64,000 nt of DNA from Chrysemys picta bellii (taxonomy: Eukaryota), in assembly GCF_011386835.1 (NCBI RefSeq), contig NC_088798.1:110236001-110300000 (forward strand), written 5' to 3'. The notes beneath the pieces were generated by a model. The model made no database searches, was not told the DNA's origin, and saw only the letters and a list, made by a program, of their open reading frames with translations. The translations under genes and the position numbers were made by a program. Shown here in pieces: positions 25,747 through 44,500 of this stretch (positions are counted from its first letter, which is position 1; each line of letters begins with the position of its first letter).

Positions 25747-27066
25747 TCAGCCCAGCAGGGAACAGTGGCGCAGGGGCCTTGCTGGGGTCTGGCCTAGTGG
25801 GGGAGCGGTGCCAGGGTCCAGCCCAGGGCGGTGGCAGCGCGGGGCCTTGGAGAGGAGCCTGCGGAAGGCTCTGCGGAAGTCCCTGTTGAAGACGGTGTAG
25901 ATGACTGGGTTGAGGCAGCTGTTGCAGTAGCCAATCCAGAAGAAGACACTGAAGAGGAGCTTGGAGATGTGGCAGCGGTCCCCGCACAGCGACTCCAGGC
26001 TGTAGGTGAAGAAGAAGGGGAACCAGCACAGGACAAAGGCACTGATCACCACGGCCAGGACAAAGGTGAACCTGTGCTCCCGCGCCTGCACCAGCCGTCT
26101 CCTGGAGATGGACATGCTCTGCTGCTCACTCCACCGCTGGGGGCCTCGAGCCAGTGCCCAGGAAGGCCTCCTGAGCCTTCTCGGGCTGGCAGTGGCGCCG
26201 TTGTTCTCCTCCTCTGGCCACTGCCTGCAGAGAAGAGCTGACCCCAGCTTGTGGGCACACTGGCTGCCCTGCTCTGTGCTTGTGTCCTGCTCTGCAGAGC
26301 TCCAGGTGGCAGTGGGCAAGCAGGAGCTGGCGCGGGAGGGGCGCTGGGCCATGCCAGGCCTGGCGGAGACGGTGCCGGAGCACCTGTGCTTGGTGATGCG
26401 ATAAATCCTGCAGTACACCACGAGCATGATGAGGCAGGGGGCGAAGAAGGAGGCGGTGCAGGAGGCCAGCACGTACCAGGTATTGTTGTTCAGCAGGCAT
26501 TCCCTGGCCTGCGGCTGGGCCGTGAACAGGGCCGGCACGGAGACAAGGCCAGCGATGGCCCACACGGCACCGATCGTGACCTTGACTCTCCCGGGGCTCC
26601 TCTGGAGGTTGAACCTGGTGGCCCTGGTGACGGCCCAGTAGCGGTCCAGGCTGATGGCACACAGGTGCAGGATGGAGGAGGTGCAGAAGAGCACGTCCAG
26701 CGCCAGGTAGAGGCTGCACCAGAGGCTGCCGAAGCCCCAGGAGCCCAGCAGCTCATTGGCCAAGGAGAAGGGGATGATGAGGGTGGCCACGAGGATGTCG
26801 GCTGAAGCCAGGGACACCAGGAAGAGGTTCTGCGGGGCCTTGAGGGCCCGGCTGGTGAAGACAGCCACCACCACCAGCGCGTTGCCCAGCAGCGTGGCCA
26901 GGATGATGGAGAGCACAGCCAGCAGGATGAGTGCCGAGGCCAGGGGGGAGTGTGGGGCCGCCCCTGGCTGCCCTCTGCTGTCGTTTCCAGACGCGTTGAG
27001 GGGAGCAGCGGGGGCGCTGACCTTCTCCATCCCAGCTACATTCCCAGGCCAGGCCGGACCCTCCAT
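25747..27066 (-). CDS. ADRA2D: Intronless alpha-2 adrenergic receptor, probable ADRA2D ohnolog, 439 aa
   Basis: Seven TM segments with alpha-2 signatures: FTSRALKAPQNLFLVSLASADILVATL, LALDVLFCTSS (D3.32), DRYW, WYVLASCTASFFAPC (S5.42/S5.46), RFTFVLAVV, CWFPFFFTY (W6.48, F6.51/6.52, Y6.55), FFWIGYCNS.LNPVIY. The alpha-2 family call is near certain; the D subtype is inferred from synteny with F12/RGS14/LMAN2. Confidence 0.85.
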   Translation of the reverse strand: MEGPAWPGNVAGMEKVSAPAAPLNASGNDSRGQPGAAPHSPLASALILLAVLSIILATLLGNALVVVAVFTSRALKAPQNLFLVSLASADILVATLIIPFSLANELLGSWGFGSLWCSLYLALDVLFCTSSILHLCAISLDRYWAVTRATRFNLQRSPGRVKVTIGAVWAIAGLVSVPALFTAQPQARECLLNNNTWYVLASCTASFFAPCLIMLVVYCRIYRITKHRCSGTVSARPGMAQRPSRASSCLPTATWSSAEQDTSTEQGSQCAHKLGSALLCRQWPEEENNGATASPRRLRRPSWALARGPQRWSEQQSMSISRRRLVQAREHRFTFVLAVVISAFVLCWFPFFFTYSLESLCGDRCHISKLLFSVFFWIGYCNSCLNPVIYTVFNRDFRRAFRRLLSKAPRCHRPGLDPGTAPPLGQTPARPLRHCSLLG

Positions 27067-28373
27067 GCAGGGAGCTGCCCGTGGGAGGGGGCAGCACCGC
27101 CCATGCCCGCCTGGCAGGCCCCAGCGTCCTCACCTGCCGACAGCCCTTTGTACGCCAGAGGAGCGGGGCCAGCCCAGCGCTGCCTGGGTGCCCAGACGGC
27201 ACGGTGCCGCGGTCAGATGTCTCCAGTGCCCCAGGGGGAGGGGACGGTCCCAGCACGCAGCAGAGCCGGAGGGGGTCTCACCCAGGCACTGGAAAGGTCT
27301 GTCCTCCCAGGGGCTGCTGCCCCCTTCCTTCCCGTCCCCGCCCGCTGGGGGAGCCGGCGTGCAGCGGGCCAGGGGCGTGCGGAGCCTGGCAGCACTGCTC
27401 CAGCACTCAGCAGCCTGGGCTCTGCCCCAGGACGGGAGGGAGGGGCTGACGTGACTGGCTGGAGCCCAAGCAGCTGCCGGCAATGGGGGAGGAAGTTTGC
27501 TGCCAACGTTTAAAGGGTCCGGGAGTTCCTGCCATGCCCCCTGCCCCCAGGGCACTGGGCCCATACTTGGGGGGAGGGACAGAGCAGGAGGATGATACAG
27601 GGGCCTGGGCACAGTGGATGGGGGGGAACAATACTCGAAGAGAGGGACTGGGGGGCTTCAGAGGGGGGATGATCCTGGGGGGCTAATACCTGAGGTGTGG
27701 GGGAGGGACTCAGGGAATGATACCAGGGAGGAGGGGCCCAGTGGGGGGATGATACTGGGGGAGTGCAGTGGGGGGACAATACCCGAGGGCGAGGGGCCAG
27801 TGGGGGGTGCAGCACAGCTGAAAAGGGCCCCAAGGTGGGATTCTGCCTGGCTGACCCCCCATCTCCACACAGTGGAGGAGGGTTGCCCAAATGGGGGGCT
27901 GGGAGCAGCTGGTCTGGGCTAGGATGAGCGCACACTACCAGGCCTCTGGGGGGAGAGCTGGGGGGGCACCGGGAGCTGGGGAGGGGGCACGGGGAGCTGG
28001 GGAGTGGGTATCGGGAGCTGGGAGCTGGAGAGGGGGCATGGGGAGCCGGGGGGGTCGCGGGGAGCTGGGGTGGGGCCCTTTCCCTGACACTGCGGCACGG
28101 GGAGGGCTCGAACTGTTTCCAGGGCAGCTCTCTGCCCGGCACGGGGCTGCTAAGGACCCTGGTCCAGCTGAGGTGCCGGTGTGCGCAGGGCAGGGTAGAC
28201 CAGGCTCTGTGGCAGCCATACAGCGAGTGGGCGGGAGGGCGAAAGGGTTGAATAGCAGAGGAGAAAGCCCCACCCCCCAGTGGCCGAGGGGGCAGCACCC
28301 CCGGCGCCCGGCCCTGCACCGATCGCCCCGGCAGGGAGCGAATAGCGAGGGGAAAACACTGCCAGGCGGCGCC

Positions 28374-28379
28374 TTTATT
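28374..28379 (-). terminator. Polyadenylation signal for the orphan exon chain
   Basis: AATAAA on the minus strand, about 155 nt after the TGA at 28533-28535. Confidence 0.55.
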
Positions 28380-28421
28380 TACCCACATTTCACTCCAGAC
28401 AGGATGGACAGACAGACAGAC

Positions 28422-28435
28422 ATCGCCATGGCAAC
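28422..28435. promoter_or_regulatory. RFX X-box-like motif
   Basis: ATCGCCATGGCAAC fits RTHNYY-AT-RRNAAC. It lies about 1.35 kb upstream of the ADRA2D ATG, within the orphan 3' UTR. Confidence 0.35.
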
Positions 28436-28532
28436 ACATGCACCGCGGGCGCTGGTGAGCTACGGGACAGCCAGGGCTCTAGCTCCGGTTAGGTACCACG
28501 TCCTGCCACCAGCATGCGGCATCTCCTGCCCC

Positions 28533-31500
28533 TCAGGTCTGCTCCGGCTGGGCAGCGCGAGGCGCCGACATGTCCTAGGGGTGCAGAGGAAACAGGCTCA
28601 GGGCTGACACAGCCACCTCCATGGGGCAGGCACCCCGGCCACTGCCCACCGCTGGGCCACCCTCAGCCCCCGCCTGCCACCCTCCAGCCAGGTCACCCGG
28701 GCACTGCCCTGCCACCCTCAGCCCCCGCCTGGGCACTGCCACCCTCGGCCCCTGCCTGGACCCTGCCCTGCCACCCTCAGCCCCCGCCTGGACCCTGCCC
28801 TGCCACCCTCCAGCCAGGCTACCCGGGCCCTGCCATCTTCAGCCCAGGCCCCTCTAGAAGCTCCTGGGCCCTTTCCGGGCTCGGGGTCCTTGAGAGTGCA
28901 TCCAGACCCATATGAGGTTTGCCAGGCACATGGCCCGGGAGCAGGGCCTGAGCTGGGCCTGCCTGGTTCCTGGCCAGGGCAGGCTCCTCAAGGCTAACAG
29001 GCAGCAAAGGAGACGGCAGGTACCTGGGAGCCGCTGGTGTCCTCCTGGCTGGGGAGAGACTTCTGGGGTGTGTGGAACGCCTGGGAAGAGAGCACAGTGC
29101 ACACAGCACAGGCCTCAGAGCCAGCGCCAGCCCGCGGGCAGGGAGAACCATCCTGACCTGGTGTGGGTCCTCAAAGCCCCCCCCCCCCCCCACCATGGAG
29201 AACCAGCCCGACCCAGTGTGGGTCCTCAGAGCTCCCCCCGGAGAACCAGCCCGACTCGGTGTGGGTCCTCAGAGCTCCCGCCCCACCATGGAGAACCAGC
29301 CCGACCCAGTGTGGGTCCTCAGAGCTCCCGCCCCGGGAGAACCAGCCCGTCCCGGTGTGGGTCCTCAGAGCTCCCCCCCGGAGAACCAGCCCAACTCGGT
29401 GTGGGTCCTCAAAGCCCCCCCCCCCATGGAGAACCATCCTGACCGGGTGTGGGTCCTCAAAGCCCCCCCCCCCCCACCATGGAGAACCAGCCCGACCCAG
29501 TGTGGGTCCTCAGAGCTCCCCCCGCCCCCGGAGAACCAGCCCGACTCGGTGTGGGTCCTCAAAGACCCCCACCCACACCATGGAGAACCAGCCCAACTCC
29601 CATGGAGAACCAGCCCGTCCCAGTGTGGGTCCTCAGAGTCTCCCCCACCCCCCCGGAGAACCAGCCCGTCCCGGTGTGGGTCCTCAGAGCCTCCCCCACC
29701 CCCCCCGGAGAACCATCCCGTCCCGGTGTGGGTCCTCAGAGCCTCCCCCACCCCCCCGGAGAACCAGCCTGACTCGGTGTGGGTCCTCAGAGGCCCCCCC
29801 CACCTTGGAGAACCAGCCCGTCCCGGTGTGGGTCCTCAGAGCCTCCCCCACCCCCCCGGAGAACCAGCCCGACCCAGTGTGGATCCTCACTCAGAGCCCC
29901 CCCGACCCGTTCAGAGCCCCCCTCCCCCTCCGAGAACAAGCCCTGCCTGGGCATGGGGTCCCTGCTCAGAACCCCTCCCACCCCTCAGCATCCCATCAGG
30001 GCTGGTTACCTTCTTGGCGGCCTGGATCTCCTCCGTGGACTTGGACCGGCCTTTCCCGGCCTGCTTCTGGGGGGAGCTGGACGGCTGCTGGGGACACAGG
30101 AAGGTCCCGTGTCTTACAGGGGGGAACACTCATCCCACAGGACCCTCAGCCGGCCCTGGCTGGCCTGGCCCAAGCGTCGCTGCACAGGGAGGCCTGGCCA
30201 CATGGCGGAATCGGCAACTGGCTCCAGGTGCAGGTGGCTCAGGCGGGCACCGGCTGTCAGGGCCCCTTTCAGCCAGCACTGCTGCTCCTGCAGTCACACT
30301 GGGCTGGGTGCCTTGTACAGAGCATTGTGGAGCACTCAGCAGCCATCCCATAATTCGCCCGCAGCAGCTGGCAGCACCAGGGACAAGCAGTGTGCACCTT
30401 AGGGCACTGGGGTCAGCGCTGACCTTGGGGGGCCCTGCTCCCTCCACTGGAGCCCTCTGTGACGTTACACCCCATATTCTTCATAGAAATATTCTCATGA
30501 TACGAATCTGGCATAACTAAGATATGTTTTATACTAGATAGGTCATGTGAGGTATCATTGGAAAGTTATGATTGACTGTATACGTTTATCCAGTGTGTCT
30601 GCATGTCTAATTTCTGTATCTAAAGTTAGGAATATTGTCTATGTAACAATTAAAACGGTGTGCTCGGGAAACTGTCACCGGACAGTAAGCAATCAGCCTT
30701 AATGGACCATTAGGAAAAGACAATGAGTCTTCGAAGATGTGGATCCCCCATCTTCCCAGGAGATCCTTCCCTGCAAATAAACCTTGTCTCATGGTTGCTC
30801 TGACACCTTGGACACTACTGGTACTTTTCCACTGGAAAAAAAGGCTTCCCGCCTTATGTACATTCTATTTAAAGCTGGGAAGCAAGGCATTCAGGGCTCT
30901 CCATTTGCCTCCCCTCCCGAGAAGAAAGATTGCTGAAGGCTCCTGCAGAAACCAAGGGACTAAGCTATGCTATGGGAAGGCAAGGGATGAGTCCAGGGAT
31001 CTCTAGCCTGTAAAGAGACATAACTGGAATTCTGAGCTGCAGAAACTCTACAACCTTCCTAAACAACACTTAGGGTGAGATGTTACTATGTGTGACCTGT
31101 TTCTGTAGCGTATTAAGATTAGTTTGTGTGTTTTGTTTTATTTACTCAGTAATCTGCTTTGTTCTGTTTGCCTTCCCTTATAATCACTTAAAATGTACCT
31201 TTTGTAGTTAATAAACTTATTTCTTGTGCATTTCAAAACCCAGTTTGTGCCATTCATACCTGAGGAGGGAAAAAGCGAGGGGGAGATTTTTATGAGCTTG
31301 CATTGTGCAGATCTCTCTGTACAGCACAAGACAATATTATTCTGGGTTTACATCCCAGAGGAGGTGTGCACATGAGTGCTGGATAAATCCCTGAGCTGAA
31401 TCTTCCCTCACAGAGTTGATTTCAGTCTGTGTCTGCAGCTGGCCGTGGCCTTACCGGTGTGTGTCTTGGCACAGCAAGGACAGGGTGAGGAAACCCAGGC

Positions 31501-31791
31501 TGGTGGAACAGGCGGACGCAGTGGGACCCCAGCACATCAGGTGGCATCCCAGACACAGGGTCCAACCCGTCACCCCCCCCACACACTGCAGCTGGGCTGC
31601 GCTGCCGCTAGAACCCCATGCTCCTTCTCCCGCAAAAGCCCAGCCTGGGTCCAGGGCCTGATGGGTGCTGCGGCGACCTCTGCCAGGCTCCCCCCCGCCT
31701 GTGGTACCTTTGTGCCGGGCTCCATGGCTCCCTGCTCCCCAGCTGCACTGAGGACTCACTCTGGTGCAGCAGAAGGCGCTGTCCTGGGGTC
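28533..31791 (-). CDS. Candidate unannotated spliced coding exons (orphan microprotein or alternative RGS14 C-terminus)
   Basis: All exons have canonical AG/GT boundaries and compatible phases: 31760-31791 (GPQDSAFCCTR) or 31708-31725 (GCCATGG Kozak, MEPGTK); 30010-30087 (QPSSSPQKQAGKGRSKSTEEIQAAKK, 25 of 26 codons end in G/C); 29024-29044 (EDTSGSQ); 28533-28574 (DMSAPRAAQPEQT*); then AATAAA. I recognise no homologue. Confidence 0.5.
28620..28830. repeat. Short minisatellite, unit about 30 bp
   Basis: Repeated GCCACCCTCAGCCCCCGCCTGG(G/A)C(A/C)CTGCCCT. Confidence 0.8.
29140..29900. repeat. Minisatellite, unit about 40-45 bp
   Basis: About 16 copies of GGAGAACCAGCCCGACCCAGTGTGGGTCCTCAGAGC(C)n. 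Confidence 0.95.
30458..31574 (+). mobile_element. Solo LTR, about 1.1 kb, AT-rich
   Basis: Inverted ends TGTGACG...CGTCAC, AATAAA at about 31210, sharp AT-rich contrast with the flanks. The 5' end is homologous to 2230-2370. Confidence 0.75.
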
Positions 31792-33399
31792 CTGCAGGAG
31801 AAAGGCCTGTCATGGGACTAGCAGAGACTGCCGGCTCTCCCTGCTCCCAGCTGTCTGCCCGTCTGGCCTTGTGGGCGAGGGACCGAGTTGGGCTCAGGGA
31901 CCCAGTTCAGTTCCCAGCTCCACCACAGATTGCGCGACCTTGGGCCAGTCCCTGGACGTGTCTGGGCTCAGCTCCTGTCCTGTGACAGCTAGATGATAAC
32001 CAGCTCCTGTGTGTCAACTGCAGGGCAGTGCTGCCAGGGCAGGGCCTGCCTCCCTGCACCCAGGCACCGCCATATTCCAAGCAAGGACAGCCCAGCCGCT
32101 GAAGGGTTCCAGGGAATGCACCTGGCCTGGAGGCCAGCAGCACAGAGGGAGCCCAGCTGTGGGGCCGGACAGAGCTGCTCGGACCACAGGGCGGGGACAG
32201 GGTGTTTCTGATCAGCAAGTGGGCCCCCGTGCCTCGGGGGGAGGGGGAGGGCAGGAACTCCCAGCCAGCCCTGCCCCCCGTTCCACCCGCCTGACAGGAT
32301 GGCCTGGCGCTCCTAGCGCACAGCAATCTGGCGAGCAGCGCAGCCGGGAGTAACCTGCACTGTCCTTGGTCCTACCCGGCCCCCATGTCCCTGGCTCCCA
32401 GCCGAGGCTGTTCGCTGCAGGTGAGCCTGGCCCAGGGACAGCTGCCGCATGGTACCGTGGAGGCCATCGCCATGGGGATAAGGAGAGCTTGCCAGGGCGA
32501 CTCTGCCTGGTACCTAGGCCCAGGAGGGCACAGCAGGATGGGGCGAGCCCAGATCCCACCGTGGGGGAACCAGAGCCCGTCAGGCCCGGCAGCCTGCAGA
32601 GCTAGTGGGATACCCAGGGTGAGTTAATCCCTCCCTCCCCCATTTCCCCAACCTTTGGCACTAGGCCATGGCATGCCCGGGGCACTGCCGCGCTACCCTG
32701 ACTGGCTCGTGGGGAGGTGCCCTGGGGAGGTGGGCGGATCAGATGCCCCCCAGGATCCCAGGAATGTCACTATGCAGATTGGCAGCAACACCCCACAAAG
32801 TGCCCCCCCTCCCGCCAGCTCCACGGGGAGAACTGAGCTGCCCCAGGACCTGCCCAGTCCAGGCGGGTGCCAGGCTGAGGGGCCCTTGCACAGAGCAAGG
32901 GGGAGGCAGCCTCGGGACCAGAGCGCCTGGTCAGTGAGAAAACAGGTTCATTGCCCATGTCCCAGCCATGGCGTCCTCCCCACTCACTCACCCCTGCCTG
33001 GTGCCTGTTCCAAGCTGCTCTAGGCTGGCAGGGCAGCCCTGTCCCCCATGCCTGCACACCTCACCGGCCAGCAGCGCCAGCCTCTCCAATGCTCCGGTGC
33101 AGCCTGGTGCCCGCTGCGCGGCATGGGGCACATTGGCTGGGGGGCTCAGCACAGAGCAGCGCCATTGCTGTGAATATAGGACCCACCCAGACTCTCTCTC
33201 CTGCTTCTCGGGGGCAGAGCAAAGGGTCAATATGCAGTCCCTGCCCCAGGAATGAGGCTGCAGCTGCCTCTGGGCTGGAACACAGCGGTTCCTGGTCAGC
33301 ACATGGGACTGTGCTCAGCCGCTTAGGCCGGAAGTGAAGTTGAAATCTACAGGGAGAACGGACGGTAGAATAAGCCCCCACCTCCTGCAAACTCCTTCC

Positions 33400-34195
33400 C
33401 CACCCCGGCCAGGCACCACAGAACCCCCTAGCACCGCCCTGGGGCCCTGGGACAGACCCCACCCCACTCCCTGCAGCAGAGCGCCCCCTAGCACCGCCCT
33501 GGGGAACAGGGACAGACCCCGCCCCGCTCCCTGCACCGCAGCACCCCCTAGCACTGCCCTGGGGAACAGGGACAGACCCCGCCCCGCTCCCTGGCCCTGC
33601 TCCCTGCAGCAGAGCACCCCCTAGCACTGCCCTGGGACAGACCCCACCCCGCTCCCTGCAGCACAGCATCCCCTAGCACCGCCCTGGGACAGACCCCACC
33701 CCGCTCCCTGCAGCACAGCATCCCCTAGCACCGCCCTGGGACAGACCCCACCCCGCTCCCTGCAGCACAGCGCCCCCTAGCACTGCCCTGGGACAGACCC
33801 CACCCCGCTCCCTGCAGCACAGCGTCCCCTAGCACCGCCCTGGGACAGACCCCACCCCGCTCCCTGCAGCACAGCGCCCCCTAGCACCGCCCTGGGGAAC
33901 AGGGACAGACCCCGCCCCGCTCCCTGCAGCACAGCGCCCCCTAGCACCGCCCTGGGGCCCTGGGACAGACCCCGCCCCGCTCCCTGCAGCACAGCGCCCC
34001 CTAGCACCGCCCTGGGGAACAGGGACAGACCCCGCCCCGCTCCCTGCAGCACAGCGCCCCCTAGCACCGCCCTGGGGAACAGGGACAGACCCCACCCCGC
34101 TCCCTGCAGCACAGCGCCCCCTAGCACCGCCCTGGGGAACAGGGACAGACCCCGCCCCGCTCCCTGCACCGCAGCACGCCCTAGCACCGCCCTGG
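33400..34195. repeat. Minisatellite, unit about 50-60 bp
   Basis: About 14 copies of CAGCACAGCGCCCCCTAGCACCGCCCTGGG(GAACAG)GGACAGACCCC(A/G)CCCCGCTCCCTG. Confidence 0.95.
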
Positions 34196-34555
34196 GTCAC
34201 TGGAGATGCGCTGATGAGGGGAACGTGCCCTCTCGTGAAACTCCCAACAGCCCAGCTCTTTGCAGTATCACCTGCGTGTTCTCTGCTGCCCCTTGCCCCT
34301 CTGCATGGCCAGTCACGCCCCCACCCCTGCCTACCGGACTGGCCGTAATCCCTGGGCTGTGCAGCGGGCTGCAGGCGGCTGGTTGCCTCTCCCACTCCCC
34401 ATTCACACCAGCCCGATGAGGTGCTGTCACATGCAGACGAGGGCAGCCAATGCGGAGCAGCCACCTCCTCAGCCGTCCTTCGCATGCAAAGCAGCACCAC
34501 AGCCAGCAAGCTGGCCTGGCCTGGGGGACTCTGGGCTCCCCTCGCAGCCCCACAC

Positions 34556-34778
34556 CAGGGCCGGCTCCCGGCACCAGCCTGGCAAGCAGGTGCTTGGGGC
34601 GTCTGCTCCGGGGAGGGGCGGCACGTCCAGGTATTCGGCGGCAATTCAGGGGATGGTCCCTCACTCCCGCTGGGAGCAAAGGACCTCCCGCCGAATTGCC
34701 GCTGCAGATCGCGAGCGCAGCTTTTTTTTTTTTTTTTTTTGTCTGCTTGGGGTGGCCAAAACCCTGGAGCCGGCCCTG
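34556..34778. mobile_element. hAT-type MITE
   Basis: 13-bp TIRs CAGGGCCGGCTCC / GGAGCCGGCCCTG, internal poly-T tract; TSD degenerate. Confidence 0.75.
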
Positions 34779-35264
34779 CCCATATCTGCCCTCAGCCCCC
34801 CATTGGGCATGGGGTCCAGCTCCCAGGAGATGCCGCCCGTCCAGCCAGACTGGGCACTGGGGACTCCTGGAGCCTGGGGCTAGCGCACAGGCTCTCACTT
34901 GCTGCAGCCCTGGAGCAGCTGAGGGTTTGGGGTTTGCTTACCCGCACTTCTGCAGCTAAACGGGGGCAGCTGTCTGGCAGAGACCCCAGTGAGGCGCATC
35001 TAAGGGCCACCCTAGGGATGCTGCTCCTGCCCTAACCCTCCCCATCCTCCTCGTCCTGACGCGCCACCAGCCACCATCTCCCTCCTCACTGGCAGGTTAC
35101 CCCAGGGAGCCTCCTCCCGCAGGGAGCTGCCAACTCTCCACAGCCCCCTGTGCACAGACATAGGCAGTGCTGGTCTGGGGGTGCAGGCTTCCATCCCCCC
35201 GTTGTCCCCATGGCGAGGACTGGTGACAGAAGCAGAGGTGCTGGGCCACGCAAGTTGTTAATCA

Positions 35265-35520
35265 GGCATATTTTACATCCCAAAGTGCTTTACAAATAAC
35301 TGACATACAAACTATATACAGGCTCACTTCACTTGCCACTGAGATGCAGCCACCTCTAGGGTGGAATGAGGCAGCTGTTTAACAACTCACAGCAACACTA
35401 CACAACAGTTTAGGACAGGAAGTGGAGAATACTGTAGTTTCCTGAAACCGCCGGGGCAGTTTAAGGAGGCAGGATTTGGCCAGGGCACTGGGGCTGACCC
35501 CAACTCAAGGCCAGACATCC
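35265..35520. mobile_element. Ancient SINE fragment (AmnSINE1/DeuSINE-like) just 3' of the RGS14 stop
   Basis: CATCCCAAAGTGCTTTACA...TGAGATGCAGCCACCTCTAGGGTGG...GGATTTGGCCAGGGCACTGGGG resembles the AmnSINE1 consensus as recalled. A related segment lies at about 33250-33290. Confidence 0.45.
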
Positions 35521-35555
35521 TCAAGGCTGGCTCTGAAGAAAGTGCAGCGTGGGCC

Positions 35556-38500
35556 TCAGTGCAGTTCAGAGTGGACAGGTGGCTGCGCCAGTCTGGGATC
35601 CCGGGGGCAAGGGGCACCAGCCCCCTTTGGGGTGAGGCTGGGATCACAGGGGCCATGCTGCCGCTCAGAGCTCTCGCTGGGGCCAGCATCCTGCCCTGGC
35701 AGCTGCAGGAAGTCGGGCAGGACCAGGACCTCTTTAGAGAGCAGCCCACGCTGGTCGTTGGCCCTGCAGCTCTGGGCCCGGTTCAGCAGCTCCACCAGCC
35801 CTGGGGGAACGAGGGGAGAGTGGAGTCATTGGGCAGAGCTAGACTTCCGCAGAACACCCCCAGACCCCTCCCCCCGAACCCCCATCCTGTGCTCAGACTC
35901 CCCTCCCCCACCCCAGAGCCCCATCCCGCACTCAGACGCCCCCTCCCCTGCCACTAGAGTTCTCATCCCGCACTCAGACGCCCCCTCCCCCACCCCAGAG
36001 CCCCCATCCCGCACTGACGCCCTCTCCCCCACCCCAGAGCCCCCATCCCGCACTCAGACGCCCCCTCCCCTGCCACTAGAGTTCTCATCCCGCACTCAGA
36101 CGCCCCCTCCCCGACCCCAGAGCCCCCATCCCGCACTGACGCCCTCTCCCCCACCCCAGAGCCCCCATCCCGCACTTAGACGCCCCCTCCCCTGCCCCTA
36201 GAGTTCCCATCCCGCACTCAGACGCCCCCCCACCCCAGAGCCCCATCCCGCACTCAGACGCCCCCTCCCCCACCCCAGAGCCCCCATCCCGCACTCAGAC
36301 ACCCCCTCCCCCACCCCAGAGCCCTCATCCCGCACTCAGATGCCCCCTCCCCCACCCCAGAGACCCCATCCCGCACTCAGATGCCCCCTCCCCCACCCCA
36401 GAGCCCCCATCCCGCACTCAGACGCCCCCTCCCCCACCCCAGAGCACCCATCCCGCACTCAGACGCCCCCTCCCCCACCCCAGAGCACCCATCCCGCACT
36501 CAGACGCCCCCTCCCCCACCCCAGAGCCCCGATCCCACACTCAGGCGCCCCCTCCCCCACCCCAGAGCACTCATCCCGCACTCAGATGCCCCCTCCCCTG
36601 CCCCTAGAGTTCCCATCCCGCACTCAGACGCCCCCTCCCCCACCCCAGAGCACCCATCCCGCACTCAGACGCCCCCTCCCAGTCCCCATTTGCCCCTGCG
36701 CTTCCTCACCCCCCATGTTTCCTTCTGACACTGAATATACCACAGACGCCCTCTGCCCCCAGCACCCCAGATATGCCTCCTGTGCCCCTGTCCCCCACAC
36801 ATACGGCTGGTTTAAGAGCATGCCAGATGCCAGGGCCGCCCACCTTCCAGGTCATACGTGCACCGGTTCATGCCCCTCAGGGCTGCTGGCCTGGACCTGG
36901 TGATGGAGGGGGGCACCTCTGACAGCATGTCTGCTTCCACCTCTGTGCCTGTGGGGGCGGCCTCCTGGGAGTGGGGGAAAGAGCATGTGAGGAGCAGGAA
37001 GATGAGCTGGCAGCCCCAGCCCAGCCCAGCAGGGAGACCTGCCTCCTCTTCAGGGCACAGAGATGCCCCAAAGCTGGCCTGGCTCAGACCCGCTGTAACC
37101 ACTGTGCCCCGACCCTGCTCCGTGCTGCAGAGCTCCCCCAACGCGCCCAGAGCTGCACCCTGGCCACAAGGCTCACCGCTCACCCCCCCCGCCCCCAAGT
37201 GAGCCAGCGAGCTGCACTCCCGGGGACTCCCAGTTCAGCCCAGCCCCAGCGACAGCCCAGGCCTACCCTAGTGCTGCCCCCCTTCGCTGGGGCACCCCCT
37301 CAGCCCCCCTGACTGGGCCCCTCTTGGTGCCCAGGACTCACCTTGCACCGAAGGGGGGAAGTGGCCACAACAGTGTCACCAGCGCCTGTCGCTTTCACTT
37401 CTGCAACACAAGCACCGCAGCGAGTCAGGCTCCAGCCTCCTGCCGTGGGACGGGGCGGGGCAGACCACCTGCCATCACAGGAGCCCGGGCCCACCAGGGA
37501 AGGACTCAGCACCACGATAACTGTGGAACTCACTGCTGTGGGATTTCATGGTGGCCAACAGCTGAGGCACATGGCACCTTACAGGTGCAGTGTCTGGGGC
37601 CGACTGAGGAGGAGGAAGATACCCGACTGGCCGGGCCCATACAGTGCTGTGTGGGGCCCACGGGACCCTGGGCTGGACACAGACTTAGTGCTGGCCTGGG
37701 CAGGCGGCAGGACCACGGGGGTGCTCCAGCCTGGCCACTCCACCCTGCGGACCATACCTGTCGCAGCTTCCAGGATGAGCTTCTGCGCAGCCACGGTGCT
37801 GACCAGCTTCTCCAGGTCCAGGGCTCCCGGCTCCCCATGCTACAGCAGAACAGAGTTGGGGGGTTGCATGGGATGGTGCATCGTGGGGAGCAAGAGCAGG
37901 CTCTGGCCACAGTGTGAGGGGCAATGAGGGTACAGGCCACACACTGGCTGGAAGTGTGGTCCCCTGGGGTAGGAGCTCTGCCCACGGGCGGGCGGGCAGC
38001 CCCATCCCCGGGGTAGGAGCTCTGCCCACGGGCGGGCGGGCAGCCCAATCCCCGGGGTAGGAGCTCTGCCCACGGGCGGGCGGGCAGCCCAATCCCCAGG
38101 GTAGGAGCTGTGCCCACGGGCGGGCGGGCAGCCCCAGCCCCGGGGTAGGAGCTGTGCCCATGGGCGGGCGGGCAGCCCCAGCCCCGGGGTAGGAGCTCTG
38201 CCCACGGGCAGGCGGGCAGCCCCAGCCCCGGGGTAGGAGCTCTGCCCACGGGCGGGCGGGCAGCCCAATCCCCAGGGTAGGAGCTGTGCCCACGGGCAGG
38301 CGGGCAGCCCCATCCCCGGGGTAGGAGCTCTGCCCACGGGCAGGCGGGCAGCCCCATCCCCGGGGTAGGAGCTCTGCCCACGGGCAGGCGGGCAGCCCCA
38401 TCCCCGGGGTAGGAGCTCTGCCCACGGGCGGGCGGGCAGCCCCGTCCCCGGGGTAGGAGCTCTGCCCATGGGCGGGCAGCCTCTGGGGAAAGCCATGTAG

Positions 38501-41500
38501 CCAGCCCCAGGCCCAGGCTCCATGGGCGGGGCACTGCCTGCAGGACAAGCCACAGTCTGGCCTCTCCTACCTGAGCAGGGCTGAGTTCTGCATGGGGGCA
38601 AAGGACTCCCTAAGCTCTGCCCCTGCAGCCCGAGGCGGGTGCTTATGCCCAGCATTGAAAGACAGCAGCCCCCTTTCTGCAGGTTCCTAGGACTCCGCCA
38701 GAGGGGGCAAGGCAGCCCCCTGCCCAGGCTGCGGGCCAGCTCTCACCCGCCGCAGCAGTGCCCGTTCCACATCCACGCCGTACTTCCCCAGCACAGGCTG
38801 CAGCGCCTCCCGCAGGCACTTGGTCGACTTTGCGGTGATTCGCACTGTTTTACTGAGGGGGGAAATTTCCAACCTAGGAAGACAGAGATGAAGGAAACAC
38901 ATGGGGCAGGATGGGCCATGCAGCAGGGAAGGATGTGGCAAGACCTGGTGGGGTGAGACAGCAGCTGGAACGATGGGGCAGGCAGGAGCTGAGGAGGTGG
39001 GGCTGTGCGGGGCAGAGCCGAGCAGGGTGGGGCAGGGCAGAGTGAGCCGGGTGGAGCTGCACTGGGCACTCATGAGCCCAGGCTGCTAGATGTCCACTCC
39101 AGGGGTGTTCATCTTGGGCGAAGCCGACTTCACTGGCCAGTCCGGGCAAGCGCTGCCAGCGCCCTGCGGCGCCCAGGCCAGTGTGTGCAGGGGCGGGACA
39201 GAGCCATGCTCCCATCTGCTCTTCTGAGGGCCCACCCCAGCTGGCTTGCGGCCTGAGCCCCACTGCACTTAGCACTAGAGCCACTGTCTCCTTCCCACGG
39301 GCACGGTGCTGCTGCCATGGGGAGCCAGGGCGTGGAGCACAGGGGAAGGTTTGGGAGAGGCAGGGACATTGCAGAGCCAGTCCTGCAGGCGCTGGCCCCA
39401 TGCTCACAGGGTGCAGCAGCAGCTCCCACTCACTCGAAGCTGACTCTGTTCTCTAGCTTCACCTCCTGGTCCATCAGAACCATGCTGTCCTGGTCCAGCA
39501 CCAGCGCCTTCTGGGAAGAGTCAGCCAAGAGGAGACACGTCAGAACCAGGAACACGGCTCCACCCGAGACACAGACCCTCCCACGGCCCTGGCACAGCAT
39601 GGAATTCCTGTCTGCAGGCAGGTGCCTCAGGTGGGCAGCGCCTGTCAGTGCGGGGCCCTGGGGTCCCTCGGGCGAGGTGGCTCCAGGGCCGGCTTTTGAT
39701 GGAGCCCCCAGGCCATCCCTGGCCTGCCCAGCTCTCTCCTCCCCACCCCAGGACCGTCCCTACCTGTTCATTGCCAACCAGGTAGACCTTGATGTCAGGG
39801 AGGCTGAAGCCGCGCTTCTCACAGAGGCCTGCCAGCATGTTGCGGATGGAGACGCCAGCCCGCACCGAGGCCAGCGAGGCCGTGCCGTCCGGCAGGTACA
39901 CACAGCAGTACTTGCTGGGCCTGGCCTGCGGGTCGGACTCCGTGCCTCCCAGGCTCTTCCTGCGGCTCTGCAGAGGAAGAGGCGGTGTCACCCGGCGGGC
40001 AGTGTGGCTACGCAGCAGGCCCCGCGGTCGGGCACTTACCTCTGCCCGGGAGCTGCTGGCCATGCTGCTGCTGCTGCAGGAAGACGAGAGGAAGCCCAGG
40101 TCCAGGCTCGCAGAGGAATTCAAGGAGCCCTGGGACTCACGCCACAGGGACGAGCCCCCATTGCCATCTTCCACCTCTAGGACAGACAGACGGATGGACG
40201 TCAGGACAAGAGGCCGGCTCTGGGGCTCCGGGCCCTTTGCGAAGGGACGGCCACAGGCCTGTGGGGCTAGTGAAATGGCAGGCAGGTGGAGCCTGGCGTG
40301 GGACTTACCTGTCCACGAGGGCTCTCTCCGCTCCTCTCTCCTGAAGGACATCTGGGGGCTCCTGCCAGCACTGCTGCCGGCCACCTCCACCCCCAGTGGC
40401 AGGGACTTCCCCAGCTTCAGCTTCGCCTTCTAGGGGACAAGAGAGGCAGATCTCGGCTCAGGGAGCTTCTGGGGCGCCCGCCCCCCCCCCCCGAGAAAGG
40501 GAATCTCCCCTGAGGAGAGGGCATTGCCTCCCCACTTTTCAGCCCCCTCCCCCCGGGCTCCTGAGCAGAGCTGGGTGGTGAATGGTGGAGCCCTTCCCTC
40601 CTGGCATGCTGGAGGAGCAGCCAGGTGTCATGACTCTAGGTGCCAGGTCATGACACCAGGTGCCGGGTCACACTGCCACTCAAATTTGGTTTGAGTCGTG
40701 CCCACGATTGCAGTCCTTCCAGCAGCCCCACCCCTGGACCACACCCCCTGGGCTGGGGAGCTGGGCCTGGTACCTTGCCGAGGTCGGGTGGGGGGCTGCT
40801 GTTCCGGGAGTGAGCCCGCAGGTCAGGGAGCGGCTGCCCCTCATTCTCAGCCCTCACACACGCCTGGAACAGTGGGGACTTCACGAAGCGCGCGTAGCTG
40901 TCGAACTTCATCAGGTTAAAGATCTGAGCCAGGAGAGGGACCCGGTTAGTGCCGTGCCTGACCCGTGACCAGAGCCCGGCACGGCCCCCGGACACACACC
41001 TGGGTAGCGCCTCCCCCCGCCCAGAGCTCGGCACGGCCCCCGGACACACACCTGGGTAGCGCCTCCCCCCGCCCAGAGCCCGACACGGCCCCCGGACACA
41101 CACCTGGGTAGCGCCTCCCCCAGCCCAGAGACCGACATGGCCCCCGGACACACACCTGGGTAGCGCCTCCCCCGGCCCAGAGCCCGGCAAGGCCCCCGGA
41201 CACACCTGGGTAGCGCCTCCCCTGGCCCAGAGCCCGGCAAGGCCCCCGGACACACACCTGGGTAGCGCCTCCCCCCGCCCAGAGCCCGACACGGCCCCCG
41301 GACACACACCTGGGTAGCGCCTCCCCCAGCCCAGAGACCGACATGGCCCCCGGACACACACCTGGGTAGCGCCTCCCCCGGCCCAGAGCCCGGCAAGGCC
41401 CCCGGACACACACCTGGGTAGCGCCTCCCCCCGCCCAGAGCCCGACACGGCCCCCGGACACACACCTGGGTAGCGCCTCCCCCCGCCCAGAGCCCGACAC

Positions 41501-44500
41501 GGCCCCCGGACACACACCTGGGTAGCGCCTCCCCCCGCCCAGAGCCCGACACGGCCCCCGGACACACACCTGGGTAGCGCCTCCCCCGGCCCAGAGCCCG
41601 GCACGGCCCCCGGACACACACCTGGGTAGCGCCTCCGCCCGCCCAGAGCCCGACACGGCCCCCGGACACACACCTGGGTAGCGCCTCCCCCCGCCCAGAG
41701 CCCGACACGGCCCCCGGACACACACCTGGGTAGCGCCTCCCCCCGCCCAGAGCTCGGCACGGCCCCCGGACACACACCTGGGTAGCGCCTCCCCCCGCCC
41801 AGAGCCCGACACGGCCCCCGGACACACACCTGGGTAGCGCCTCCCCCAGCCCAGAGACCGACATGGCCCCCGGACACACACCTGGGTAGCGCCTCCCCCG
41901 GCCCAGAGCCCGGCAAGGCCCCCGGACACACCTGGGTAGCGCCTCCCCTGGCCCAGAGCCCGGCAAGGCCCCCGGACACACACCTGGGTAGCGCCTCCCC
42001 CCGCCCAGAGCCCGACACGGCCCCCGGACACACACCTGGGTAGCGCCTCCCCCAGCCCAGAGACCGACATGGCCCCCGGACACACACCTGGGTAGCGCCT
42101 CCCCCGGCCCAGAGCCCGGCAAGGCCCCCGGACACACACCTGGGTAGCGCCTCCCCCCGCCCAGAGCCCGACACGGCCCCCGGACACACACCTGGGTAGC
42201 GCCTCCCCCCGCCCAGAGCCCGACACGGCCCCCGGACACACACCTGGGTAGCGCCTCCCCCCGCCCAGAGCCCGACACGGCCCCCGGACACACACCTGGG
42301 TAGCGCCTCCCCCGGCCCAGAGCCCGGCACGGCCCCCGGACACACACCTGGGTAGCGCCTCCGCCCGCCCAGAGCCCGACACGGCCCCCGGACACACACC
42401 TGGGTAGCGCCTCCCCCCGCCCAGAGCCCGACACGGCCCCCGGACACACACCTGGGTAGCGCCTCCCCCCGCCCAGAGCCCGACACGGCCCCCGGACACA
42501 CACCTGGGTAGCGCCTCCCCCCGCCCAGAGCCCGACACGGCCCCCGGACACAGACCTGACTCAGAGGCAGAGGGACAAGTCCCAGAATCAGGAGCTCTGG
42601 ATTCCTGTCCCCTACTCCCAGCTGAGAGTTGGGGGAGGGAATATGTCCCCAGCTCCTCCGTCCTGAGCCTTGGGGGATGGCTCCATGGCCCCTCTCCCTT
42701 GGCCGGGGGGTTGGGCAGGGGCAATGCTCACCTGGAGCTGTTGCACTCGGAACATGTCGGGGGTGGGCGTGGCCAGCATTTCCTCCCCGATCCAGGCCTG
42801 CCGGTCGATGTTAACGGGGCTGACCGCCTGGCTGGACAGGAACTCGTCATAGATCTGCCGGGCCTCCTTCGCCAGCTGGGGAGACAGAGTTATCACAGGG
42901 GAGGCCGAGCCCCCTTGCCTGTGTGCATGGGAGCACACGCAGAGTAGGGTCACCAGCCACGCTCCAAGTGCAGGCACCACCTTGCGCCGACCCCTTGGGA
43001 ACCCAGGAACGGCCAGGCTGGGCCAGTCCCGGGGGCCCTCCAGCCCAGCAGCCCTTGCCTGCAGTGCCCAGCACCAGATGTTCAGAGGAAGGTGTAGGAG
43101 CCCTGCTCCTGACCCATAACAATCAGAGACTGGCCGAAGACCCAAGGCAGGAGGTTTTAGCCCTTCCAAATGCCATCTGCACTGTTATAGCTCTGCATCC
43201 CCCTGTTCTCCATTCACAAGGCCAGCTCCTCTCAGGCTCTCACTAGGTGCTGGCCTCACTGACATCCTGTGGCAATGAGTTCCACTGCTTATTTACACTG
43301 GGGCGGAGGATTACCTTCGATCAGTTTGAACTTCCCCTCGTTCTTGTGTGCCAGACAGACGGTCCCAAGGTTCCATCTCGAGACCATGCCCCATTTCCTC
43401 ATCTTGCTAAGGGAACAATCCCCGTCTGCTCTGTCTCTCTCCAGCCCCTGATCATTGGCATTGTCCTTCTCTTAGAGCCTGTCAGTTCAGCACGGCCCCC
43501 AGGGGTGACCGGTGCAGCACACAATGGCCAAGGGAGCTCCATGCTATTCTCCATCCCCTCACCCATTAGCTATTGGCTGCAGCTCCCCTCTGAGCAGGGT
43601 CTCCACTGAGCTTCCTACTGACGCCCAGGTCCCTTTGGCTGCCCTGGCATGTGCTTCCCTGCGGGGGGCAGCCCAGGTCTAAGCCTCAGTGTGGGCCGGG
43701 CTAGCTAGGCTCCCACTGTCAGGAGTGGGGCATGGGCAGGCTGGGCCAAGCCGCTAGCCCTCCCCTGGGCCCAGTACCTGCTGTGTGTTCCTGGCTGGGA
43801 TCTGCTGGAATCGCTCACACGCCTGCCAGAAGTAAACGTTCTCAGCGCTGAACTCCTTCTTCAGGAACTCCTGGGGAGCAGGAGAGGAACACGGTGGCAT
43901 CAGCCTCACCAGTGCCACTACCCCCGCCCGGGGGGGCCAGCCCTACCCACGCCCGGGGGGGCCAGCCCAGCCTCCATCCAGGGGTACCAGCGCAACCCCC
44001 ACCCTCTGCCCCCCGGCCTCACGCTGCCTGGAGTCCCTGCACAGCGAGCAGCTGGAGAATGGGGGGAACTGAGGGCAGTGAGGGGGGTGGGCTGGACCCG
44101 GCAGGGTCTGACACGCCCTGGCACTCACAGTGAAGTAGGTGACGGCCACCCGGTCCTGCAGCAGTGTCTCGAAGGACTCGGCCCAGCTGGCCACGGGCAG
44201 CTGCGCAGTGTAGCCTGCGTTCTGGGCACCAGGCAGGCTGTGCACACTGTGGCTACTGCCCCGGGCCCTGGAGCTGTTTAACTCTGAGATGCAGAAAGAG
44301 AGGTTAGGCCCTGCCCCACTCCCTGGAGCCAGTCCTGATCCCCGCCCAGCTGGAGGGAAGGTGTGGGGAGGCGCTGTCCAAGCAGGGCAGGGCCGGGAGC
44401 CCTAAAGCCAGGCACTCCAGAGCAGGGCCGCCAGATCTAGGGCCCATGGGCCACACAGGATCCCTCTGACATGTCAGAACCGGCACGGCGCCGGCAGACA

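What the first reader, a model, noticed from the sequence alone, without database searches (positions are those of the whole stretch)
28374..31791. Hidden spliced coding unit between RGS14 and ADRA2D: an orphan 52-aa microprotein or a GoLoco-less RGS14 tail
Seen: on the minus strand there is a chain of exons with canonical splice sites and compatible phases, invisible in the ORF track because they are tiny. These are 30010-30087 (25 of 26 codons G/C-ending), 29024-29044 (all G/C-ending) and a terminal exon 28574-28533 ending in TGA, followed by AATAAA at 28379-28374. Two possible upstream exons exist. (A) 31725-31708 has a perfect GCCATGG Kozak and an AAG|GT donor, giving MEPGTK-QPSSSPQKQAGKGRSKSTEEIQAAKK-EDTSGSQ-DMSAPRAAQPEQT* (52 aa). 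(B) 31791-31760 (GPQDSAFCCTR) starts in phase 1, the phase in which RGS14 exon 14 ends. Inference: splicing RGS14 exon 14 to exon B would skip the GoLoco exon and give an RGS14 isoform unable to bind Galpha-i-GDP, with a new Cys-Cys/basic tail. I also saw no canonical AATAAA closely following RGS14 exon 15. I recognise no homologue.
Basis: partly seen in the sequence, partly recalled or inferred. Interest (0 to 1): 0.8.

Follow-up and report, generated by a model that had tools for sequence, protein, structure and literature searches.

The report
Conserved 64-aa microprotein gene beside RGS14
The tiny exons are real: they form a spliced, polyadenylated 4-exon gene for a 64-residue disordered protein found, unnamed, from sharks to lizards, and not an RGS14 tail.

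Summary
Assembled RNA contigs from two studies of the window's species and from two related species carry the three splice joints 31708>30087, 30010>29080 and 29024>28574. All are GT..AG on the minus strand. The contig ends 17 nt after AATAAA.

It is 57 nt (29080-29024), not 21 nt, so the protein has 64 residues, not 52.

The exon B donor at 31760 is not used in any of the four runs.

The protein is not an orphan. About 70 homologues exist in sharks, bichir, sturgeon, teleosts, frogs and squamates. All are labelled hypothetical, and none has a Pfam family. They share an invariant core, AKKAFHTPQKSLP, that spans the corrected exon 2/3 junction. The 4-exon, phase-0 structure is the same in shark, frog, pufferfish and lizard.

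The gene lies about 4 kb downstream of RGS14 on the same strand in pufferfish and lizard too. dN/dS against lizard is about 0.23. The fold is predicted disordered with one short helix.

Verdict: a real, unannotated orthologue of an unnamed, uncharacterised gnathostome microprotein family. The GoLoco-less RGS14 isoform is unsupported. Function is unknown; a short-motif, phospho-regulated role is only inferred.

The parts
31708..31918 (-). Exon 1. It is mostly 5' UTR; the coding part is ATG 31725 to 31708 (6 codons, MEPGTK). The 5' end is at least 31918 (X26) or 31954 (X5).
   Evidence: X26 record 9 is continuous over 31708-31918, X30 record 15 over 31708-31792, and X5 record 25 over 31786-31954. 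Depth falls to about 0 above 31954. Kozak context GGAGCCATGG, an in-frame stop 10 codons upstream, and donor AAG|GTACCACA.
31811..31813 (-). Upstream ATG in a weak context (cccATGa) and out of frame. It opens a 108-codon ORF that overlaps the main ORF through all splices.
   Evidence: This ORF was not searched against any database. Only the 64-aa frame was searched, and it gave the homologues.
30088..31707 (-). Intron 1 (GT..AG). It holds an AT-rich, repeat-like insert at about 30460-31300.
   Evidence: joint 30087>31708 skips 1620 nt in X26, X30 and X5. Many contigs only 90-95% alike pile up on 30500-31330. GC drops to 0.53.
30010..30087 (-). Exon 2: 78 nt, 26 codons, phase 0/0. It encodes QPSSSPQKQAGKGRSKSTEEIQAAKK.
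   Evidence: The family profile matches here in the own-genome search (E 5.9e-6).
29081..30009 (-). Intron 2 (GT..AG), with a 49-51-bp minisatellite at 29185-29907.
   Evidence: the joint skipping 929 nt is present in all four runs; tandem repeat rows.
29024..29080 (-). Exon 3: 57 nt, 19 codons, phase 0/0. It encodes AFHTPQKSLPSQEDTSGSQ.
   Evidence: One search gives the joints on both sides in all four runs; acceptor ctcttcccag|GCGTTC. The exon has the same 57-nt length in shark, Xenopus and Podarcis.
28575..29023 (-). Intron 3 (GT..AG).
   Evidence: the joint skipping 449 nt is present in all four runs.
28357..28574 (-). Exon 4. The coding part is 28574-28533 (13 codons plus TGA at 28535-28533). 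It is followed by a 3' UTR of about 176 nt.
   Evidence: X26 record 9 covers 28357-28573 and ends there..
28374..28379 (-). AATAAA polyadenylation signal, 17 nt before the end of the spliced contig.
35556..35830 (-). Context: the last RGS14 coding exon, with the GoLoco motif. Its stop is at 35558-35556, 3.8 kb upstream of the microprotein ATG.
25747..27066 (-). Its ATG lies 1.3 kb downstream of the microprotein poly(A) site.
   Evidence: 439-aa ORF. (7tm_1, 1.8e-63). (best PDB matches are alpha-2A/2B/2C, E about 1e-109). The subtype was not tested.

Best explanation
This is an independent, four-exon, polyadenylated protein-coding gene on the minus strand, between RGS14 and the alpha-2 adrenoceptor gene.

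Shown:
- Transcription starts near 31920-31955.
- Three phase-0 introns are removed.
- The contig, and so probably the mRNA, ends about 17 nt after AATAAA.
- The ORF from the strong-Kozak ATG at 31725 encodes a 64-residue protein (about 6.8 kDa).
- That protein is the orthologue of an unnamed family found from cartilaginous fishes to squamates.

Inferred:
- Ribosomes reach the main ATG by leaky scanning past a weak, out-of-frame uATG at 31813.
- The protein is intrinsically disordered. It has a basic N-terminal half (pI about 10) holding one short helix, and an acidic tail (pI about 4).
- It acts through short linear motifs rather than a fold. One is the invariant K-x-R-S-K-S, which resembles a basophilic AGC-kinase or 14-3-3-type R-S-x-S site. 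The other is the invariant AKKAFHTPQKSLP.
- It would therefore work as a small phospho-regulated binding or inhibitor protein, in the manner of PCP4-, ARPP- or PKI-type proteins. The partner is unknown.
For: Transcript: one search shows spliced contigs with all three GT..AG joints in two independent studies of the window's species and in a second species, and two of the joints in a third. The contig ends at 28357, after the AATAAA at 28379-28374.

Coding:
- 20 hits, E 1.5e-10 to 5e-7.
- 73 proteins by profile, in sharks, bichir, sturgeon, teleosts, frogs and squamates.
- an exhaustive HMM search gave 30 clusters, and no match looked like a member of another family.
- 20 invariant columns, including AKKAFHTPQKSLP across the exon 2/3 joint.
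- the same four coding exons and intron positions in Chiloscyllium, Xenopus, Takifugu and Podarcis.
- over exons 2+3 against Podarcis, dN 0.17 and dS 0.74. Against frog and shark, dS is saturated while dN is 0.3-0.4.

Synteny: the gene lies 3.8-4.3 kb downstream of an RGS+RBD(+GoLoco) gene, on the same strand, in Takifugu and Podarcis, as it does here.

Independent mRNA: stand-alone contigs of 1.2-2 kb with 70-430-nt leaders were found in cyprinid, other teleost, shark and frog. A teleost paralogue lies head-to-head with a CDC20-like gene.

Disorder: ESM pLDDT 0.31. AlphaFold2 mean pLDDT 58, with only the helix at residues 20-29 of the frog protein. No Pfam family. pI values are.
Against: - There is no direct proof of translation: no ribosome profiling and no peptides.
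- The transcription start is only bounded by where contigs end. Contigs cannot show true 5' ends.
- A weak uATG 88 nt upstream opens an overlapping 108-codon ORF, which would lower translation of the main ORF.
- The functional model rests on motif resemblance only.
- The TPQK threonine and the SPQK serine are not kept in all teleosts, so a proline-directed kinase site is not a family-wide feature.
- A third species (X13) shows no exon 1 coverage and abundant unspliced intron 1 sequence. This is unexplained.
Confidence: 0.9

Rival explanations
1. The ORF is a downstream cistron of the RGS14 transcription unit. RGS14 transcripts would fail to terminate, run into exon 1 and be spliced and polyadenylated at 28357. 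The microprotein would then be made from, or co-regulated with, an extended RGS14 mRNA.
For:: on the minus strand there is no AATAAA or ATTAAA in the 4.4 kb between the RGS14 stop and 31146; one teleost RNA contig (L005, 3371 nt) carries an RGS14 ORF (RGS, RBD, GoLoco) and, 1.15 kb further on the same strand, the fully spliced microprotein ORF; faint X26 contigs at 32213-32457, upstream of exon 1. The tandem arrangement is conserved in fish, lizard and this genome.
Against:: depth falls to zero between 31955 and 33100 in X5 and X13, and to about a fifth or zero in X26, so no continuous transcript from RGS14 is seen here. Six contigs from other species are stand-alone mRNAs with short leaders. 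An assembled contig across two close genes does not prove a single molecule. Non-canonical poly(A) signals were not examined.
Confidence: 0.1
2. One reading: RGS14 exon 14 splices to the acceptor at 31791, skipping the GoLoco exon. This would give an RGS14 isoform with a new tail.
For:: exon 14 ends at 36844 in phase 1 with a GT donor, and 31793-31792 is an AG behind a pyrimidine tract; the X30 contig has 7 unplaced letters immediately 5' of 31792.
Against:: no contig uses the 31760 donor, and X26 reads through 31918-31708 unspliced. If the 31791 acceptor were used without that donor, the RGS14 frame would continue in the frame of the 108-codon uATG ORF, not in the conserved microprotein frame. 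The seven clipped letters could equally be a mismatch or an untranslated leader exon. Annotated RGS14 genes in Takifugu and Podarcis end before the microprotein gene.
Confidence: 0.05
3. The exons are leader exons of alpha-2 adrenoceptor transcripts, or of a read-through RNA into that gene, and are not a gene of their own.
For:: in X5 (second species) one 1764-nt contig runs co-linearly from the exon 4 acceptor (28576) through the poly(A) site and on for about 345 letters past 27150, towards the receptor ATG (27066).
Against:: in the window's species the spliced contig stops at 28357, 17 nt after AATAAA, and X26 and X30 have no depth over 27349-28343. X5 also carries intron sequence throughout, so it holds unprocessed RNA. 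In Podarcis no alpha-2 receptor lies within 10 kb downstream, yet the gene is intact.
Confidence: 0.04
4. It is a spliced non-coding RNA whose short ORF is open by chance in GC-rich DNA.
For:: all three frames of the 564-nt mRNA are largely open, and a 108-codon ORF overlaps the 64-codon one. There is no peptide evidence.
Against:: the 64-codon frame has significant homologues with 20 invariant residues from shark to lizard, conserved intron phases, and dN much lower than dS.
Confidence: 0.01

Closest known systems
Unnamed gnathostome family of 'hypothetical/uncharacterized' proteins of 64-76 aa. Examples are UniProt V9LEF8_CALMI (Callorhinchus), XELAEV_18017292mg (Xenopus laevis), FKM82_012358 (Ascaphus) and the Podarcis lilfordi and Takifugu flavidus entries (P0019, P0015, P0006, P0038, P0048).
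   Same: It shares the invariant core (SPQK..K.RSKS..E..AKKAFHTPQKSLP), the acidic tail, four coding exons with phase-0 introns at the same places, and the position just downstream of RGS14 on the same strand.
   Different: It is the shortest member class at 64 aa, and its tail is poorly conserved. It has no in-frame N-terminal extension of the kind annotated in some squamate and frog entries. No protein from a turtle, bird, crocodilian or mammal turned up in either protein collection searched.
Small heat-stable, disordered phospho-regulators (PCP4/PEP-19, neurogranin, ARPP-19/ENSA, PKI, DARPP-32/inhibitor-1). This comparison is from my own knowledge.
   Same: Similar size, predicted disorder with one short helix, a basic segment carrying a basophilic-kinase-type serine, and an acidic tail.
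   Different: There is no sequence homology. The IQ consensus is not met: the Q is L or V in sharks, and the G/R positions are missing. There is no RVxF or FDSGDY motif. The resemblance is to a way of working, not family membership.
RGS14 (RGS, two RBDs, GoLoco).
   Same: Same strand, immediately upstream, with linkage conserved from teleost to reptile. One fish RNA contig joins both ORFs.
   Different: There is no shared sequence, and no splice joint between them was observed here. The GoLoco exon at 35.6-35.8 kb is intact.

Membership tests
Unnamed gnathostome microprotein family (V9LEF8_CALMI / XELAEV_18017292mg type) | Significant whole-length sequence similarity, with the invariant core K-x-R-S-K-S ... 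AKKAFHTPQKSLP | tested here: met
   (E down to 1.5e-10 with the single sequence). (20 invariant columns, all present in the window's protein). (the family profile finds exons 2 and 3 of this locus and no other significant match in the genome; a third hit has E 3.2).
Unnamed gnathostome microprotein family (V9LEF8_CALMI / XELAEV_18017292mg type) | Four coding exons with phase-0 introns: after a 3-7-codon first coding exon, after ..AKK, and after a 19-codon third exon | tested here: met
   joints; phases; the same structure in Chiloscyllium, Xenopus, Takifugu and Podarcis. Read-through ORFs ending ..AKK|V.. in unspliced fish contigs mark the same donor.
Unnamed gnathostome microprotein family (V9LEF8_CALMI / XELAEV_18017292mg type) | Position a few kb downstream of RGS14 on the same strand | tested here: met
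   window; Takifugu; Podarcis. Not verifiable in shark and Xenopus, where 10-kb flanks held no called gene. One teleost paralogue lies elsewhere.
Alternative RGS14 isoform (GoLoco-less tail) | A splice joint from an RGS14 exon into these exons, continuing the RGS14 reading frame | tested here: inconclusive
   joint 31760>30087 is absent in four runs, and X26 reads through the exon B acceptor. The X30 contig, however, has 7 unplaced letters 5' of 31792. The RGS14 side (36844) lay outside the stretch that could be laid.
IQ-motif calmodulin-binding small proteins (PCP4, neurogranin) | IQxxxRGxxxR consensus, or a Pfam IQ match | tested here: not met
   no Pfam hit; the Q is not invariant (L or V in sharks), and the G and second basic positions are A and P.
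Protein-coding gene (as opposed to lncRNA) | Purifying selection on the reading frame | tested here: met
   dN/dS about 0.23 against Podarcis. Synonymous sites are saturated against frog and shark while dN is 0.3-0.4.
Protein-coding gene (as opposed to lncRNA) | Evidence of translation (ribosome footprints, peptides) | not testable with these tools
   No ribosome-profiling or proteomic data could be reached.

The most novel reading that the evidence does not exclude
The microprotein and RGS14 form an ancient tandem expression unit, read-through or bicistronic in some tissues and independent in others. The microprotein would be a phospho-dependent modulator of Gi/o signalling, sitting between a Gi/o GAP/GDI (RGS14) and a Gi-coupled receptor (alpha-2D). 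It may have disappeared from mammals together with ADRA2D, which would explain why so conserved a protein has no name or literature.
Probability: 0.1. Interest if true: 0.75.

Novelty: new member of a known kind. Interest (0 to 1): 0.55.

Why it matters
Neither protein collection searched holds a protein for this gene from a turtle or any other archosaur-line or mammalian species. Yet it belongs to a family with 20 invariant residues over roughly 450 million years, and that family has no name, no Pfam entry and no paper that I could find.

The result corrects the gene model and shows that the ORF is under selection. It also gives a concrete, testable candidate: a very small disordered protein, tightly linked to RGS14, that can be knocked out in zebrafish or Xenopus. 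It is also a clean example of the kind of gene that ORF-length filters miss.

It does not show a new kind of mechanism.

Tried and rejected
1. Loose ends in the read lay-out at 30084, 28963, 27159 and 29177 looked like alternative exons.
- None is in the window.
- Three map to unrelated places on another scaffold: C2:148.27 Mb and C2:5.005 Mb.
- The C2:148.27 Mb locus shares only a 15-nt exact match with the mRNA; the C2:5.005 Mb loci share no more than 11 nt exactly.
- The loose end at 29177 was not traced, and I attribute it to the intron 2 repeat.
- I judged them contigs of other loci touching GC-rich stretches, not isoforms.

2. Pfam, ESM Atlas feature and structure search and AlphaFold2 gave no family or fold. 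The Atlas structure rows are meaningless for a model with pLDDT 0.31.

3. Literature searches found nothing about this protein. I tried peptide strings, ADRA2D+RGS14, and RGS14+microprotein terms. The ADRA2D paper (10.1101/106526) supplies only context: ADRA2D is absent in mammals and crocodiles.

4. A second copy in this genome was sought with the family profile. Only this locus matched.

5. Synteny in shark and Xenopus could not be checked, because 10-kb flanks held no called neighbour gene and no RGS14 match.

6. I did not search the 108-aa overlapping ORF, because it has no reference and would have needed long typed text.

7. I did not run complex prediction, since I claim no specific partner.

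8. Conservation among the three related species is only suggestive. None of the 40 listed differences falls in the 195-nt CDS and 4 fall in the 3' UTR, but 27 rows were not shown.
Full report
**Observation**

- A 78-nt exon at 30087-30010, between a ccccag acceptor and an AAG|GTAACC donor. 25 of its 26 codons end in G or C.
- A donor after 29024.
- A last exon starting at 28574, with TGA at 28535-28533.
- AATAAA at 28379-28374.
- ATG 31725 in a GCCATGG context, followed by an AAG|GT donor after 31708.

RGS14 exon 14 does end at 36844 in phase 1. The GoLoco exon lies at about 35830-35556. On this strand there is no AATAAA or ATTAAA between the RGS14 stop and 31146.

**Transcript evidence**

The first run search, with the whole 3.6-kb stretch, returned mainly runs that hold everything, introns included. 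A second search used only the last exon and 3' UTR. It brought up further runs of the same species (studies P8 and P10) that hold the exon but had shown next to none of the long stretch. That is the pattern expected of processed RNA.

I laid two of those runs (X26, X30) and one run each of two related species (X5, X13) on 27150-33100. This gave three joints with GT..AG ends on the minus strand:
- 30087>31708
- 29079/80>30009/10
- 28573/4>29023/4

All three are present in X26, X30 and X5. The latter two are present in X13. One 564-nt X26 contig and one 385-nt X30 contig carry all four exons.

The X26 contig ends at 28357, 17 nt after AATAAA. At the other end it runs without a break from 31708 up to 31918. 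A short X5 contig reaches 31954, and above that depth is about zero in X5 and X13.

The gene model that follows is:
- Exon 1: at least 31918 to 31708.
- Exon 2: 30087-30010.
- Exon 3: 29080-29024.
- Exon 4: 28574-28357.

The real exon is 57 nt.

**Coding potential**

The spliced mRNA has two long ORFs:
- 64 codons from the strong-context ATG at 31725, preceded by an in-frame stop.
- 108 codons from a weak-context ATG at 31813 in another frame.

The 64-aa product finds 20 proteins at E 1.5e-10 to 5e-7. A profile of 14 of them finds 73 proteins and, in an exhaustive HMM search of 1.8 billion representatives, 30 clusters. No match looked like a member of another family.

The hits come from catsharks and elephant shark, bichir, sturgeon, many teleosts (often two copies), frogs and squamates. 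Nearly all are named hypothetical or uncharacterized. Two carry names that look like annotation spill-over ('sodium-dependent phosphate transport protein 2A-like', 'SEC7').

Twenty columns are invariant. They include K-x-R-S-K-S and the run AKKAFHTPQKSLP.

Longer hits of 137-214 aa are ORFs that read through the donor after ..AKK in unspliced fish contigs. They mark the same intron position.

Mapping the shark, Xenopus, pufferfish and lizard proteins on their loci shows the same four coding exons, phase-0 introns and a 57-nt third exon.

Over exons 2+3, dN/dS against Podarcis is 0.17/0.74. Against frog and shark, synonymous sites are saturated while dN is 0.3-0.4.

The family profile finds no significant second copy in this genome.

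**Genomic context**

- The downstream ORF 27066-25747 is an alpha-2 adrenergic receptor.
- The plus-strand ORFs around 18 kb carry kringle and trypsin domains.
- RGS14 exons run from 43.9 to 35.7 kb on the minus strand.
- In Takifugu flavidus and Podarcis lilfordi the homologue also lies 4.3 and 3.8 kb downstream of an RGS+RBD(+GoLoco) gene on the same strand.

**Independent gene or part of a neighbour?**

Six RNA contigs from cyprinid, another teleost, shark and frog are stand-alone mRNAs of 1.2-2 kb with leaders of 70-430 nt. A teleost paralogue sits head-to-head with a CDC20-like ORF. The family therefore has its own promoters.

One teleost contig (L005) does carry an RGS14 ORF and, 1.15 kb further on, the spliced microprotein ORF. 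Together with the lack of a canonical poly(A) hexamer after the RGS14 stop here, this keeps read-through from RGS14 alive as a minor rival. But the depth gap above 31955 argues against it in these samples.

In X5 a contig continues from exon 4 past the poly(A) site towards the receptor ATG. X5 also holds intron sequence, so I read this as unprocessed or read-through RNA.

The X30 contig has 7 unplaced letters just 5' of the AG at 31793-31792. This could be a splice from an upstream exon or a clipped mismatch.

**What the protein is like**

It has 64 residues and weighs about 6.8 kDa. It has a basic N-terminal half (pI 10.1) and an acidic tail (pI 4.1). It has no Pfam family.

The ESM model has pLDDT 0.31. 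The AlphaFold2 model of the frog protein, built with the family alignment, has mean pLDDT 58 and a single helix over TEEIQQAKKA.

From my own knowledge of motif consensus:
- K-x-R-S-K-S fits a basophilic AGC-kinase site and the R-S-x-S core of 14-3-3 mode I.
- SPQK and TPQK fit proline-directed kinase sites, but they are not kept in all teleosts.
- The IQ-motif and RVxF consensus are not met.

I therefore commit only to a disordered, short-motif, probably phospho-regulated small protein with an unknown partner. This step is inference.

**Comparison and novelty**

The locus is an unannotated orthologue of an existing but unnamed and uncharacterised family. No paper was found.

No member from mammals, birds, crocodilians or turtles turned up in the protein collections searched. 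This does not show absence, as this very locus demonstrates.

ADRA2D is reported to be absent in mammals and crocodiles (10.1101/106526). Whether this gene was lost with it is open.

**Verdict**

- Reading A is right in substance after correction to 64 aa.
- Reading B is unsupported.
- The finding is a real and moderately interesting gene, not a new kind of system.

Noticed in passing
window 31146-35556, minus strand: There is no AATAAA or ATTAAA hexamer in the 4.4 kb after the RGS14 stop codon. Where RGS14 transcripts end in this species is therefore unclear.
   Followed up: partly
window 29185-29907: A GC-rich minisatellite of about 14 copies of a 49-51-bp unit fills most of intron 2. A smaller 27-32-bp array lies at 28702-28815 in intron 3.
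   Followed up: no
window about 30460-31300: An AT-rich block in intron 1 attracts many contigs that are only 90-95% alike and that continue into unrelated sequence. It looks like a dispersed repeat or transposon copy.
   Followed up: no
window 30035-31137 (run X13): In the third species, long unspliced contigs cover exon 2 and the 3' part of intron 1 at a depth similar to the spliced joints. Nothing covers exon 1 or anything above 31528. Possible causes are an alternative start inside the repeat, intron retention, or local divergence. This is unexplained.
   Followed up: no
window 27150-28576 (run X5): In the second species a 1764-nt co-linear contig runs from the exon 4 acceptor through the poly(A) site and on past the low end of the laid stretch, towards or into the alpha-2 receptor coding region. 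This suggests read-through into the neighbouring gene.
   Followed up: partly
L005:3-3060: A teleost RNA contig joins an RGS14 ORF (RGS, RBD, GoLoco) and the spliced microprotein ORF on one strand, 1.15 kb apart.
   Followed up: partly
L007:1-1891: A second teleost copy of the microprotein gene lies head-to-head with a CDC20/Fizzy-like ORF, with 410 nt between the two start codons. This implies a shared bidirectional promoter region.
   Followed up: no
P0001, P0038, P0040 (squamates); P0004, P0005, P0024 (frogs): Annotated proteins and one RNA contig carry in-frame N-terminal extensions upstream of the family's Met. These extensions are similar within squamates and within frogs, but not between the two groups. 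This genome has a stop in that position. They may be lineage-specific longer isoforms or conserved leaders.
   Followed up: no
window 40648-42724 and 33300-34200, minus strand: Very long open frames made of GC-rich tandem repeats lie inside an RGS14 intron and in the RGS14-microprotein spacer. They are repeat artefacts in the ORF list, not genes.
   Followed up: no
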